A DNA stretch of 63,352 nucleotides, counting the filler, from Octopus bimaculoides (lineage: Eukaryota): assembly GCF_001194135.2 (NCBI RefSeq). It is 5 parts of 4 records of this genome, joined end to end, with 100 filler letters (N's around TTAATTAATTAA, not from the genome) between each part and the next. Parts side by side here need not be neighbours in the genome. Positions count along the whole stretch, not along the records: positions 39,066 to 62,223 come from NC_069006.1; 4 more parts are not named here. One strand, 5' to 3'. The position numbers were made by a program, and so were the translations under genes. The notes under the pieces are model-generated. The model made no database searches. It was not told the origin of the DNA and worked only from the letters and a program-made list of their open reading frames with translations. Shown in pieces: positions 49,870 through 50,700 of this stretch (positions within the stretch are counted from its first letter, which is position 1; every line of letters starts with the position of its first letter).

Positions 49870-50700
49870 TCAATATCTTTTGGCAAATTCAATCATAAAT
49901 ATCTGATCGCTATTGTTTTTCGGCATCGGAGAAGATCGATCGCGATTCGCTGGTATACAGGGACTATGAGTCTCCTGTGCTTCGACTTACTGTATGTCTA
50001 GTCGGTCAAAACCACCCCGAATCGATGAATCTAAGAACATAATTAAATGTTGATGCTTTCTGATGTCTGTCAAACATATAACGATTGACGGGATGCACGA
50101 AGAACAGCGAGGGTACCGAGAATGACGTATATTCTTACTCCCAGAACGTTTTGGCAGATTCAGACATAAGAGGCTGATTCTGTTTTGCGTCATCGTCATC
50201 CTTTAAATGACGTGTATTCTTAACATATGCGATTCTCCTGTGTGAGAGGATTTTGAGACACTGTGTGGTTTCGACCTTATGATGAGTGCCTTCATTGAAA
50301 GCTATCCAGGACCGAGGAATCTAACGAGTAAACGTTCTTATTTTTAGAAATGATATTTTGCAGATTTATGCTGACATCTGTAAATCAGATAATAATTCGT
50401 GAGGTGCAGAAAAGAACAGCGATGTCAGGGACTTTGAGACCCGGCAGAGTTTCGACCTTACTGTCAGTCTCTTCAGTTAAAGCTATTCAGAACCAATGAC
50501 TAAAAACAAGAATAGGGGCTCTTGTTTACAGAGATAATAATTATTTTGCCGATGGATACTCATGCCTGCCAAACGGACGGCAATTCTCGAGGTACAAACA
50601 AAACAGCGGTGTAAGGGACTCTGAGACACGACGACGTTTGACCTTATTGTATGTCTCCTCAGTTAAAGCTATTCAGGGGCAATGAATCAAGGGAAAATAA
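49870..50700 (-). repeat. Degenerate tandem array of four hammerhead-bearing monomers (retrozyme-like)
   Basis: Cleavage-site-equivalent positions at 49970, 50257, 50438 and 50625 (spacings 287, 181, 187 bp). Monomers share gggact..gagac..tttcgacctta..ttaaagctattcag and agaacagcg blocks. Confidence 0.8.
50431..50483 (-). ncRNA. Type I hammerhead ribozyme motif with intact core (array monomer 3)
   Basis: Minus strand reads GCUUUAA-CUGAAGA-GACU(gacaguaa)GGUC-GAAA-CUC(ugcc)GGG-UC-UCAAAGU. All core nucleotides are present with a GUC triplet. Helix I pairs 6 of 7 (one A.C), helix II 4 bp, helix III 4 bp. Predicted cut lies between 50438 and 50437. Activity untested. Confidence 0.8.

What the first reader, a model, noticed from the sequence alone, without database searches (positions are those of the whole stretch)
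49870..50700. Tandem array of hammerhead-ribozyme monomers: candidate cephalopod non-LTR retrozyme
Seen: four diverged monomers carry a type I hammerhead layout on the minus strand, with cleavage-equivalent sites at 50625, 50438, 50257 and 49970. Monomer 3 (50431-50483) is canonical: CUGAAGA, a G-C closed helix II, GAAA, a 4-bp helix III, a GUC triplet and a helix I with one A.C mismatch. The others are damaged. Monomer 4 has CUGAGGA but lacks G12; monomer 2 has C3A, A9G and G10.1C; monomer 1 reads CCGACUA/GAAG/GAC. The two leftmost monomers share an extra ~100-bp flank (49870-49950 vs 50135-50240), so the ancestral unit may be ~290 nt. Established: animal non-LTR retrozymes are non-coding tandem monomers of a few hundred nt with type I hammerheads that yield circular RNAs, and Penelope-like elements are the proposed mobilisers. 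Inference: this is such a family. I do not know of a description in octopus but cannot check. Both neighbours of monomer 3 look dead, so this locus should be cut once rather than release a monomer circle.
Basis: partly seen in the sequence, partly recalled or inferred. Interest (0 to 1): 0.85.

Follow-up and report, generated by a model that had tools for sequence, protein, structure and literature searches.

The report
Decayed tandem hammerhead-ribozyme repeat (retrozyme-like)
A roughly 900-base stretch holds four worn-down head-to-tail copies of a short non-coding repeat that once carried a self-cutting hammerhead RNA; only one copy keeps a complete ribozyme core, so it looks like a fossil of a known kind of animal mobile element, not something new.

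Summary
On the minus strand of about 49830-50745 there are four diverged tandem monomers, spaced 186, 181 and 290 nt. Each carries a hammerhead-like segment at the same position. Only monomer 3 (50432-50482, cut site 50438|50437) has the full type I core and three helices. This points to descent from a working hammerhead rather than a chance look-alike.

The motif is weak, however. Rfam Hammerhead_1 scores it 24.3 bits against a cut-off of 34. The hammerhead fold (-3.6 kcal/mol) loses to a competing helix (-11.1 kcal/mol). Monomer RNAs fold no better than shuffles. Four sequences give no usable covariation.

A second, 99%-identical partial copy lies at 56517-56691, next to an assembly gap. It is colinear with the array, not circle-permuted.

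I could not reach any other genomic copies, expression data or the organism. The best reading is a decayed non-LTR-retrozyme-like array, a kind already known in molluscs and many other animals. It is a new member of a known kind and of modest interest.

The parts
49830..50745 (-). Whole tandem array of four diverged monomers. The boundaries are approximate: the low-coordinate end lies between 49795 and 49875, and the high-coordinate end between 50685 and 50745.
   Evidence: The flank at 49636-49795 is a different interspersed repeat.
50560..50745 (-). Monomer 4, the 5'-most unit on the minus strand. Its hammerhead-like segment is about 50612-50676, with the C17 equivalent at 50625. The core is intact except for a deleted G12. 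Helix III is kept, with one pair flipped from U.G to G.U.
   Evidence: Rfam gives no hit at E<10.
50432..50482 (-). Hammerhead of monomer 3, the only canonical type I core. The predicted cut is between 50438 and 50437.
50375..50559 (-). Monomer 3, a short-type unit. The distance from cleavage site to cleavage site (50624 down to 50438) is 187 nt.
50111..50374 (-). Monomer 2. Its hammerhead-like segment is about 50244-50309, carrying C3A, A9G and G10.1C, with the C17 equivalent at 50257. It is followed by the extra segment of about 100-130 nt.
49830..50110 (-). Monomer 1, the most decayed unit. It reads CCGACUA / GAAG / GAC, with the C17 equivalent at 49970. It is followed by its own copy of the extra segment, about 49835-49955.
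   Evidence: families D3 and D5.
56517..56691 (-). Second partial copy, 99% identical to 50413-50587. It includes an identical hammerhead at 56536-56586 (C17 at 56542). Its 3' side runs into the N gap at 55990-56516, and its 5' flank is unrelated to the array.
   Evidence: family D9.

Best explanation
This is a decayed tandem array descended from a short non-coding repeat that carried a type I hammerhead ribozyme in every unit. In other words, it is a fossil locus of a non-LTR-retrozyme-like element.

When the ancestral array was transcribed from the minus strand, each hammerhead would have cut after its GUC. That would release unit-length RNAs of about 185 nt (short form) or about 290 nt (long form). 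In known retrozymes such RNAs are ligated into circles and are thought to be copied back into DNA by a retroelement's reverse transcriptase.

At this locus three of the four ribozymes have lost essential residues. A minus-strand transcript could therefore be cut at most once, at 50438|50437, and no monomer could be excised. The surviving ribozyme is itself thermodynamically weak, so its activity is uncertain.

What is shown: the tandem anatomy, the core sequences and their defects, and the second near-identical copy.
What is inferred: ancestral self-cleavage, circular RNA formation, retrotransposition, and membership of a wider genomic family.
For: Four head-to-tail units are spaced 186, 181 and 290 nt.

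The hammerhead segment is the best conserved part of the unit. Mean column identity is 80% there, against 52% for whole units and 46% for the downstream part.

Monomer 3 has every invariant core residue and three helices in type I topology.

Every departure from the core in monomers 1, 2 and 4 is private to one monomer, so the four-way consensus is CTGAAGAG..GTCGAAAC..GTC, which is canonical.

Helix III in monomer 4 is kept through a change on both sides of one pair. Monomer 1 has a G-C pair at helix I position 2.2-1.2, where monomers 3 and 4 have A.C.

My descriptor found no hit in 56 Mb of simulated sequence.

GC is 0.37-0.44. No ORF in the array exceeds 70 aa and no Pfam family matches.

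The long and short unit variants differ by one indel, as reported for coral and axolotl retrozymes (PMC7229834).

A second copy at 99% identity lies 6.1 kb away with a different 5' flank. This shows the monomer-3 type was copied much more recently than the array diverged.
Against: The Rfam Hammerhead_1 score of 24.3 bits is below the gathering score of 34, and E is only 0.063 when the whole 23-kb piece is searched.

The hammerhead fold evaluates at -3.6 kcal/mol. The minimum-energy fold is -11.1 kcal/mol and pairs GAGACU with GGUCUC, burying G8, A9 and C17. The z-score is +0.7. Two unrelated metagenomic hammerheads with the same GAGAC/GUCUC letters do fold as hammerheads, with z about -4.

Unit-length RNAs fold no better than shuffles, with z of 0.17 and -0.02, whereas retrozyme circles are described as highly self-paired.

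Covariation over four sequences does not differ from shuffles, and the competing helix is paired in 79% of cells against 84% for the hammerhead.

The second copy is colinear with the genomic array rather than permuted as a circle-derived copy would be.

No further family members were found by any route open here.
Confidence: 0.68

Rival explanations
1. A fragment of another hammerhead-bearing mobile element rather than a stand-alone retrozyme. Candidates are the pseudo-LTR of a Penelope-like element, or a SINE-like element of the Schistosoma Sm-alpha kind that became locally duplicated.
For: Type I hammerheads also occur in the pseudo-LTRs of Penelope-like elements, and retrozyme consensus sequences in frogs are related to those pseudo-LTRs (10.64898/2026.07.22.740005). 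The second copy at 56517-56691 looks like a 5'-truncated, colinear copy, as non-LTR retrotransposition of a linear transcript would give. Only four units are present.
Against: Hammerheads of Penelope-like elements are described as minimal variants (PMC7229834; the 1-bp helix III is from my own knowledge), whereas helix III here has 4 bp. ORFs of 80 aa or more in the 23-kb piece give no reverse transcriptase or GIY-YIG match, though this check is not exhaustive. ARAGORN finds no tRNA-like sequence. The short period of 181-290 nt, with the hammerhead in every unit, is the retrozyme layout.
Confidence: 0.15
2. An ordinary tandem repeat in which one unit resembles a hammerhead by chance. No ribozyme ever functioned here.
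For: The Rfam score is sub-threshold. The hammerhead fold is not the minimum-energy fold. There is no covariation signal. My analytic estimate allows a few tens of chance descriptor matches in a multi-gigabase genome (and my own arithmetic).
Against: The match sits in the most conserved block of a tandem unit of retrozyme size. The other three units differ from the canonical core only by private changes, so the ancestral unit already had the full core. By my estimate, the chance of a random descriptor hit falling inside this 0.9-kb array is about 1e-5.
Confidence: 0.1
3. A live retrozyme locus that still releases circular RNA from this array or from the copy at 56.5 kb.
For: The hammerhead is intact at two loci that are 99% identical, which implies recent copying. 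The 527-nt gap next to the second copy could hide further intact units.
Against: Excising a monomer needs two active hammerheads in tandem. Both neighbours of monomer 3 lack essential residues: G12 is missing in monomer 4, and monomer 2 has C3A, A9G and G10.1C. By the working definition of Li et al. 2026, an active element has a hammerhead in all of its repeats.
Confidence: 0.05

Closest known systems
Non-LTR retrozymes of metazoans (Cervera and de la Pena 2020, PMC7229834), in particular those of the mussel Mytilus galloprovincialis
   Same: Non-coding tandem monomers of a few hundred nt with low GC and a type I hammerhead at a fixed place in each unit. Length variants arise from indels. The mussel hammerheads also lack the archetypal loop-loop contacts and cleave slowly.
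   Different: This locus has only four units at 61-81% identity, and only one has an intact core. The units are shorter (181-290 nt against 350-390 nt in mussel). The monomer RNA is not predicted to be highly self-paired. No circular RNA or copy-number data are available.
Amphibian satellite 2 / axolotl retrozymes (HHR_Amex1 and HHR_Amex2)
   Same: Tandem repeats carrying type I hammerheads. Two unit sizes differ by an indel.
   Different: The amphibian motifs have a helix III of 1-2 bp and partly act as dimers, whereas helix III here has 4 bp. [quoted passage not shown]
Minimal hammerheads in the pseudo-LTRs of Penelope-like elements (Cervera and de la Pena 2014; Li et al. 2026, 10.64898/2026.07.22.740005)
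   Same: Type I topology in a repeated arrangement. These elements are the proposed source and mobiliser of retrozymes.
   Different: No reverse-transcriptase or GIY-YIG ORF was detected nearby. Helix III here is a normal stem rather than the minimal form.
Hammerhead_1 (RF00163) loci annotated in the giant squid genome (235 loci, PMC6962438)
   Same: Type I hammerhead matches in a cephalopod genome, if this window is indeed cephalopod.
   Different: Those loci passed the annotation pipeline's threshold, and their genomic arrangement was not described. The motif here scores below the Rfam gathering cut-off.

Membership tests
Hammerhead ribozyme, type I (Rfam RF00163) | Invariant core: C3 U4 G5 A6 N7 G8 A9, G12 A13 A14, the A15.1-U16.1 pair, and H17 | tested here: met
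   Monomer 3 and its copy at 56536-56586 have every core residue. Monomers 1, 2 and 4 do not.
Hammerhead ribozyme, type I (Rfam RF00163) | Three helices around the core, with helix I open and helices II and III closed by loops | tested here: met
   Helix I has 6 pairs plus one A.C mismatch. Helix II has 4 pairs, one of them U.G. Helix III has 4 pairs, one of them U.G.
Hammerhead ribozyme, type I (Rfam RF00163) | Score at or above the curated Rfam gathering threshold | tested here: not met
   The score is 24.3 bits against a threshold of 34.
Hammerhead ribozyme, type I (Rfam RF00163) | Helices supported by compensatory changes among relatives | tested here: inconclusive
   Over four sequences, 83.6% of cells are paired and one pair changes on both sides. 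This does not differ from shuffles.
Hammerhead ribozyme, type I (Rfam RF00163) | Hammerhead fold thermodynamically accessible | tested here: not met
   The hammerhead fold is -3.6 kcal/mol against -11.1 kcal/mol for a competing fold. Control hammerheads fold correctly. Nearest-neighbour models ignore core and tertiary contacts, so this weakens the case for activity but does not exclude it.
Hammerhead ribozyme, type I (Rfam RF00163) | Mg2+-dependent self-cleavage after C17 | not testable with these tools
   This needs in vitro transcription.
Non-LTR retrozyme | Head-to-tail tandem repeats with a unit of about 150-450 bp | tested here: met
   Four units are spaced 186, 181 and 290 nt.
Non-LTR retrozyme | A type I hammerhead in each repeat unit (the criterion of Li et al. 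2026 for an active element) | tested here: not met
   One of the four units is intact. The other three keep the position but have lost essential residues.
Non-LTR retrozyme | Low GC (<45-50%), non-coding, and no LTR, PBS or PPT | tested here: met
   GC is 0.37-0.44. The longest ORF in the array is 70 aa and has no Pfam match. LTR, PBS and PPT were not searched for specifically.
Non-LTR retrozyme | Unit-length RNA predicted to be highly self-paired | tested here: not met
   The z-scores are 0.17 and -0.02 relative to shuffles. These are decayed units, so the ancestral state is unknown.
Non-LTR retrozyme | Many dispersed genomic copies (mobility) | tested here: inconclusive
   One further copy lies in the 23-kb piece. 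The source genome could not be searched. Searches of the protein collection and metagenomes found no relatives.
Non-LTR retrozyme | Expression as circular RNA of unit length | not testable with these tools
   No transcriptome data can be reached from here.
Non-LTR retrozyme | Co-occurrence with Penelope-like elements in the same genome | not testable with these tools
   No such element was seen in the piece. The literature reports Penelope-like elements in cephalopods (PMC8557442, PMC6962438), but the organism of this window is unverified.
Pseudo-LTR of a Penelope-like element | Minimal hammerhead (helix III of about 1 bp) next to a reverse-transcriptase / GIY-YIG ORF | tested here: not met
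   Helix III has 4 bp. ORFs of 80 aa or more give no reverse-transcriptase or GIY-YIG match, though this check is not exhaustive.
Sm-alpha-like SINE carrying a hammerhead | tRNA-derived 5' part with pol III boxes | tested here: inconclusive
   ARAGORN finds no tRNA-like sequence in the piece. I ran no dedicated search for A and B boxes.

The most novel reading that the evidence does not exclude
The two 99%-identical intact hammerheads could be recent offspring of a still-active cephalopod retrozyme family that has not been described. Its master copies elsewhere in the genome would release circular RNAs of about 185 or 290 nt. The array at 49.8-50.7 kb would then be an old insertion of that family, into which, or from which, a young unit was copied.
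Probability: 0.3. Interest if true: 0.4.

Novelty: new member of a known kind. Interest (0 to 1): 0.25.

Why it matters
If confirmed genome-wide, this would add cephalopods to the animal groups known to carry hammerhead-based retrozymes, and it would give a unit sequence with which to look for small circular RNAs in their transcriptomes. That would extend an established phenomenon rather than add a new mechanism. This particular locus is mostly dead and unlikely to have any function of its own.

Tried and rejected
Fishing for other family copies:
- I used ORFs and stop-free frames of the monomers as protein queries against the 5.8-billion-protein collection. This gave no candidates or no scores.
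- Look-ups of window ORFs in the contig index found nothing on record.
- A family-specific DNA pattern scanned over JGI metagenomes returned two contigs (L001, L002). Both carry unrelated, single, prokaryote- or phage-style hammerheads.
- The same pattern over viral contigs returned nothing.

Identifying the organism:
- The LINE-like ORF gave only a 54% relative in a Logan run.
- A literature search on that run's accession prefix led to an unrelated paper.

Other checks that led nowhere or were negative:
Pfam was therefore run only on the ten ORFs; the stop-free frame segments listed were read by eye, not scanned.
- Rfam at gathering threshold found nothing in the piece. In E-value mode, the roughly 120 other hits, mostly microRNA-like, sit almost entirely on microsatellite runs and score far below their cut-offs.
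- I considered and rejected a tRNA-derived SINE and a coding element.
- I also rejected the idea that the second copy is a circle-derived insertion. The 25 nt after its cleavage site match the sequence downstream of monomer 3, not monomer 4, at four diagnostic positions.

Full report
**What is in the sequence**

On the minus strand, between about 50745 and 49830, lie four head-to-tail units of a non-coding repeat.
- The repeat finder recovers a 54-nt core at 50637, 50451, 50270 and 49980. The spacings are 186, 181 and 290 nt, and identity to the monomer-3 copy is 81%, 100%, 72% and 61%.
- A profile built from the four units matches them (by construction) and finds exactly one more place in the 23-kb piece, at 56519-56663.
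- Tandem Repeats Finder does not report the array, because the units are too diverged.
- Units 4 and 3 are the short form, about 185 nt.
- Units 2 and 1 carry an extra 100-130 nt inserted directly after the 3' strand of helix I. This gives the long form of about 290 nt (families D3 and D5).
- On the low-coordinate side the array ends before 49795, where a different interspersed repeat begins. That repeat (49636-49795) is 77% identical to 42597-42758.

**The hammerhead**

Monomer 3 reads 5'-GCUUUAA CUGAAGA GACU-GACAGUAA-GGUC GAAA CUC-UGCC-GGG UC|UCAAAGU (the last A of GAAA is A15.1 and the U before C17 is U16.1; together with CUC/GGG they form the 4-bp helix III).
- Every invariant core position is present.
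- Helices II and III each have 4 pairs, one of them a U.G pair.
- Helix I has 6 pairs plus one A.C mismatch.
- C17 is at window position 50438.
- Rfam Hammerhead_1 aligns it end to end over model positions 1-45, at 50432-50482 on the minus strand. The score is only 24.3 bits against a gathering score of 34. E is 0.0036 when 1.3 kb is searched and 0.063 when the whole piece is searched.

- Monomer 4 has lost G12.
- Monomer 2 has C3A, A9G and G10.1C.
- Monomer 1 reads CCGACUA, GAAG and GAC.

From established hammerhead biochemistry (my own knowledge), G12, C3 and the A15.1-U16.1 pair are essential. Those three units should therefore be inactive.

**Is it more than chance?**

I wrote a type I descriptor requiring the core, helix II of at least 3 bp, helix III of at least 4 bp including A15.1-U16.1, and helix I of 6 positions with at most one mismatch.
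- It finds only the two identical hammerheads in the piece.
- It finds nothing in 56 Mb of simulated sequence of the same dinucleotide composition.
- My arithmetic gives about 6e-9 per position. That is about 3e-4 for the piece, but tens of matches in a genome of several gigabases. The motif alone would not be convincing genome-wide.

Two further facts make the case.
- First, the hammerhead block is the best conserved part of the unit. Mean column identity is 80% there, against 52% for whole units and 46% for the downstream part.
- Second, every departure from the canonical core in monomers 1, 2 and 4 is private to a single monomer. The majority consensus of the four is therefore itself a canonical hammerhead.

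The simplest history is a working hammerhead in the ancestral unit, followed by independent decay. Monomer 3 acquiring a full core by accident is much less likely. Monomer 1 keeps a G-C pair at helix I position 2.2-1.2, where monomers 3 and 4 have A.C. This suggests that even monomer 3 has drifted.

**Weak points**

- The nearest-neighbour energy of the hammerhead fold is -3.6 kcal/mol. The minimum-energy fold is -11.1 kcal/mol and pairs GAGACU (G8, A9 and the 5' strand of helix II) with GGUCUC (the 3' strand of helix III, C17 and the start of helix I). The 66-nt segment folds no better than shuffles, with z = +0.7.
- As a calibration, two unrelated metagenomic hammerheads that share the same GAGAC...GUCUC letters fold into the hammerhead as their minimum-energy structure, with z about -4.
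- Unit-length RNAs (187 nt and 181 nt) have z-scores of 0.17 and -0.02. Retrozyme circles, by contrast, are described as highly self-paired (PMC7229834).
- With four sequences, covariation is uninformative. The hammerhead is paired in 83.6% of cells and has one change on both sides of a pair (helix III, U.G to G.U in monomer 4). This does not differ from shuffles. The competing helix is paired in 79% of cells.

Self-cleavage of monomer 3 is therefore plausible but not assured. I put it at roughly even odds.

**The second copy**

The stretch 56517-56691 is 99% identical to 50413-50587, with two mismatches, both outside the ribozyme. It carries the same hammerhead at 56536-56586, which also scores 24.3 bits.
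- Its 5' end on the minus strand falls in the spacer, 37 nt downstream of the cleavage-equivalent site of monomer 4. The sequence upstream of it is unrelated to the array and unique in the piece.
- Its 3' side runs into a 527-N assembly gap.
- The 25 nt after its cleavage site match the sequence downstream of monomer 3 (UCAAAGUCCCUGACAUCGCUGUUCU), not that downstream of monomer 4 (UCAGAGUCCCUUACACCGCUGUUUU). The copy is therefore colinear with the genomic array and is not the permuted product expected from a monomer circle.
- It could be a DNA-level duplication, a 5'-truncated retrocopy of a read-through transcript, or a scaffolding artefact. The gap prevents a decision.
- Whatever its origin, it is far younger than the divergence among the array's units.

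**Surroundings**

- Neither ARAGORN nor Rfam at gathering threshold finds any RNA gene in the piece.
- The ten ORFs scanned give only a sub-threshold mariner HTH_48 match at 46820-47167. There is no reverse transcriptase or GIY-YIG nuclease.
- A LINE-like ORF at 61011-61622 has a 54% relative in a Logan assembly.
- The region is rich in microsatellites, interspersed repeats and assembly gaps.

**Mechanism**

The best-supported account is a fossil of a hammerhead-bearing tandem retroelement. In a live element of this kind:
1. The array is transcribed.
2. Each hammerhead cuts after GUC.
3. The unit-length RNAs are circularised.
4. They are thought to be reverse-transcribed by a Penelope-like element's enzyme (PMC7229834; 10.64898/2026.07.22.740005).

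Here only the anatomy is shown and every later step is inferred. At this locus at most one cut is possible, so no monomer or circle can be released.

**Comparison with what is known**

The published features of non-LTR retrozymes are tandem units of 150-450 bp, a type I hammerhead per unit, GC below 45-50%, no coding capacity, and unit-length circular RNAs.
- Met here: unit size, tandem layout, GC (0.37-0.44) and absence of coding capacity.
- Not met here: a hammerhead in every unit, and a self-paired monomer RNA.
- Could not be tested: circular RNA, copy number, and co-occurrence with Penelope-like elements.

Such elements are already described in a mollusc (mussel, about 5000 hammerhead copies) and in cnidarians, rotifers, flatworms, annelids, arthropods and amphibians (PMC7229834). 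The giant squid genome paper lists 235 Hammerhead_1 loci (PMC6962438). My literature searches found no description of a retrozyme in octopus or any other cephalopod.

**Verdict**

It is a new member of a known kind, of modest interest unless a genome-wide search shows a live family.

Noticed in passing
56517-56691 (minus strand), next to the N gap at 55990-56516: A second partial copy of the monomer 4/3/2 junction region, 99% identical to 50413-50587. It carries an identical hammerhead at 56536-56586. It is colinear with the array and has an unrelated 5' flank.
   Followed up: yes
49636-49795 and 42597-42758: An interspersed, possibly SINE-like repeat, 77% identical over about 160 nt. One copy directly abuts the low-coordinate end of the hammerhead array.
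   Followed up: partly
51480-51700; 54584-54946; 43542-43703; 58441-58506: Another interspersed repeat family, 72-82% identical and present in both orientations. Each copy lies next to microsatellite runs.
   Followed up: no
46820-47167 (minus strand): A mariner-like transposase remnant. Pfam HTH_48 scores 21.9 bits, just below its cut-off of 24.1. By my reading, a neighbouring frame at about 46570-46880 looks like a mariner C-terminus.
   Followed up: partly
61011-62000 (minus strand): A LINE-like ORF of 203 aa with a 54% relative (P0001) on two Logan contigs. By my reading, an adjacent frame carries an RT C-terminal-type motif (LDYCSQLWSP). No Pfam hit.
   Followed up: partly
50121-50137 and 50206-50222: A 17-nt direct repeat, 94% identical and spaced 85 nt apart, inside the extra segment of monomer 2. 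It could mark an internal duplication or an old small insertion.
   Followed up: no
58694-58965; 54022-54142: A 95-nt tandem repeat (2.9 copies, 92% matches) in CAA-rich sequence, and a 16-nt minisatellite (7.6 copies, 96% matches).
   Followed up: no
55775-55810 and 55954-55989: A 36-nt inverted repeat, 94% identical, ending exactly at the edge of the assembly gap.
   Followed up: no
Whole piece, 39066-62223: Rfam in E-value mode lists about 120 other sub-threshold hits, mostly microRNA-like (mir-297, mir-3149, mir-466 and others) plus a few snoRNA/scaRNA-like ones. Almost all lie on (TA)n or (CA)n-type microsatellites and are artefacts. The copy-2 hammerhead was missed in this large run but was found when its region was searched alone.
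   Followed up: yes
L001 3152-3192 and L002 11101-11141 (metagenome contigs): Two strongly folding hammerheads with type I topology (z about -4), apparently lying between ORFs (by eye) in what look like prokaryotic or phage contigs. They are unrelated to the window's repeat and were used only as a folding control.
   Followed up: partly
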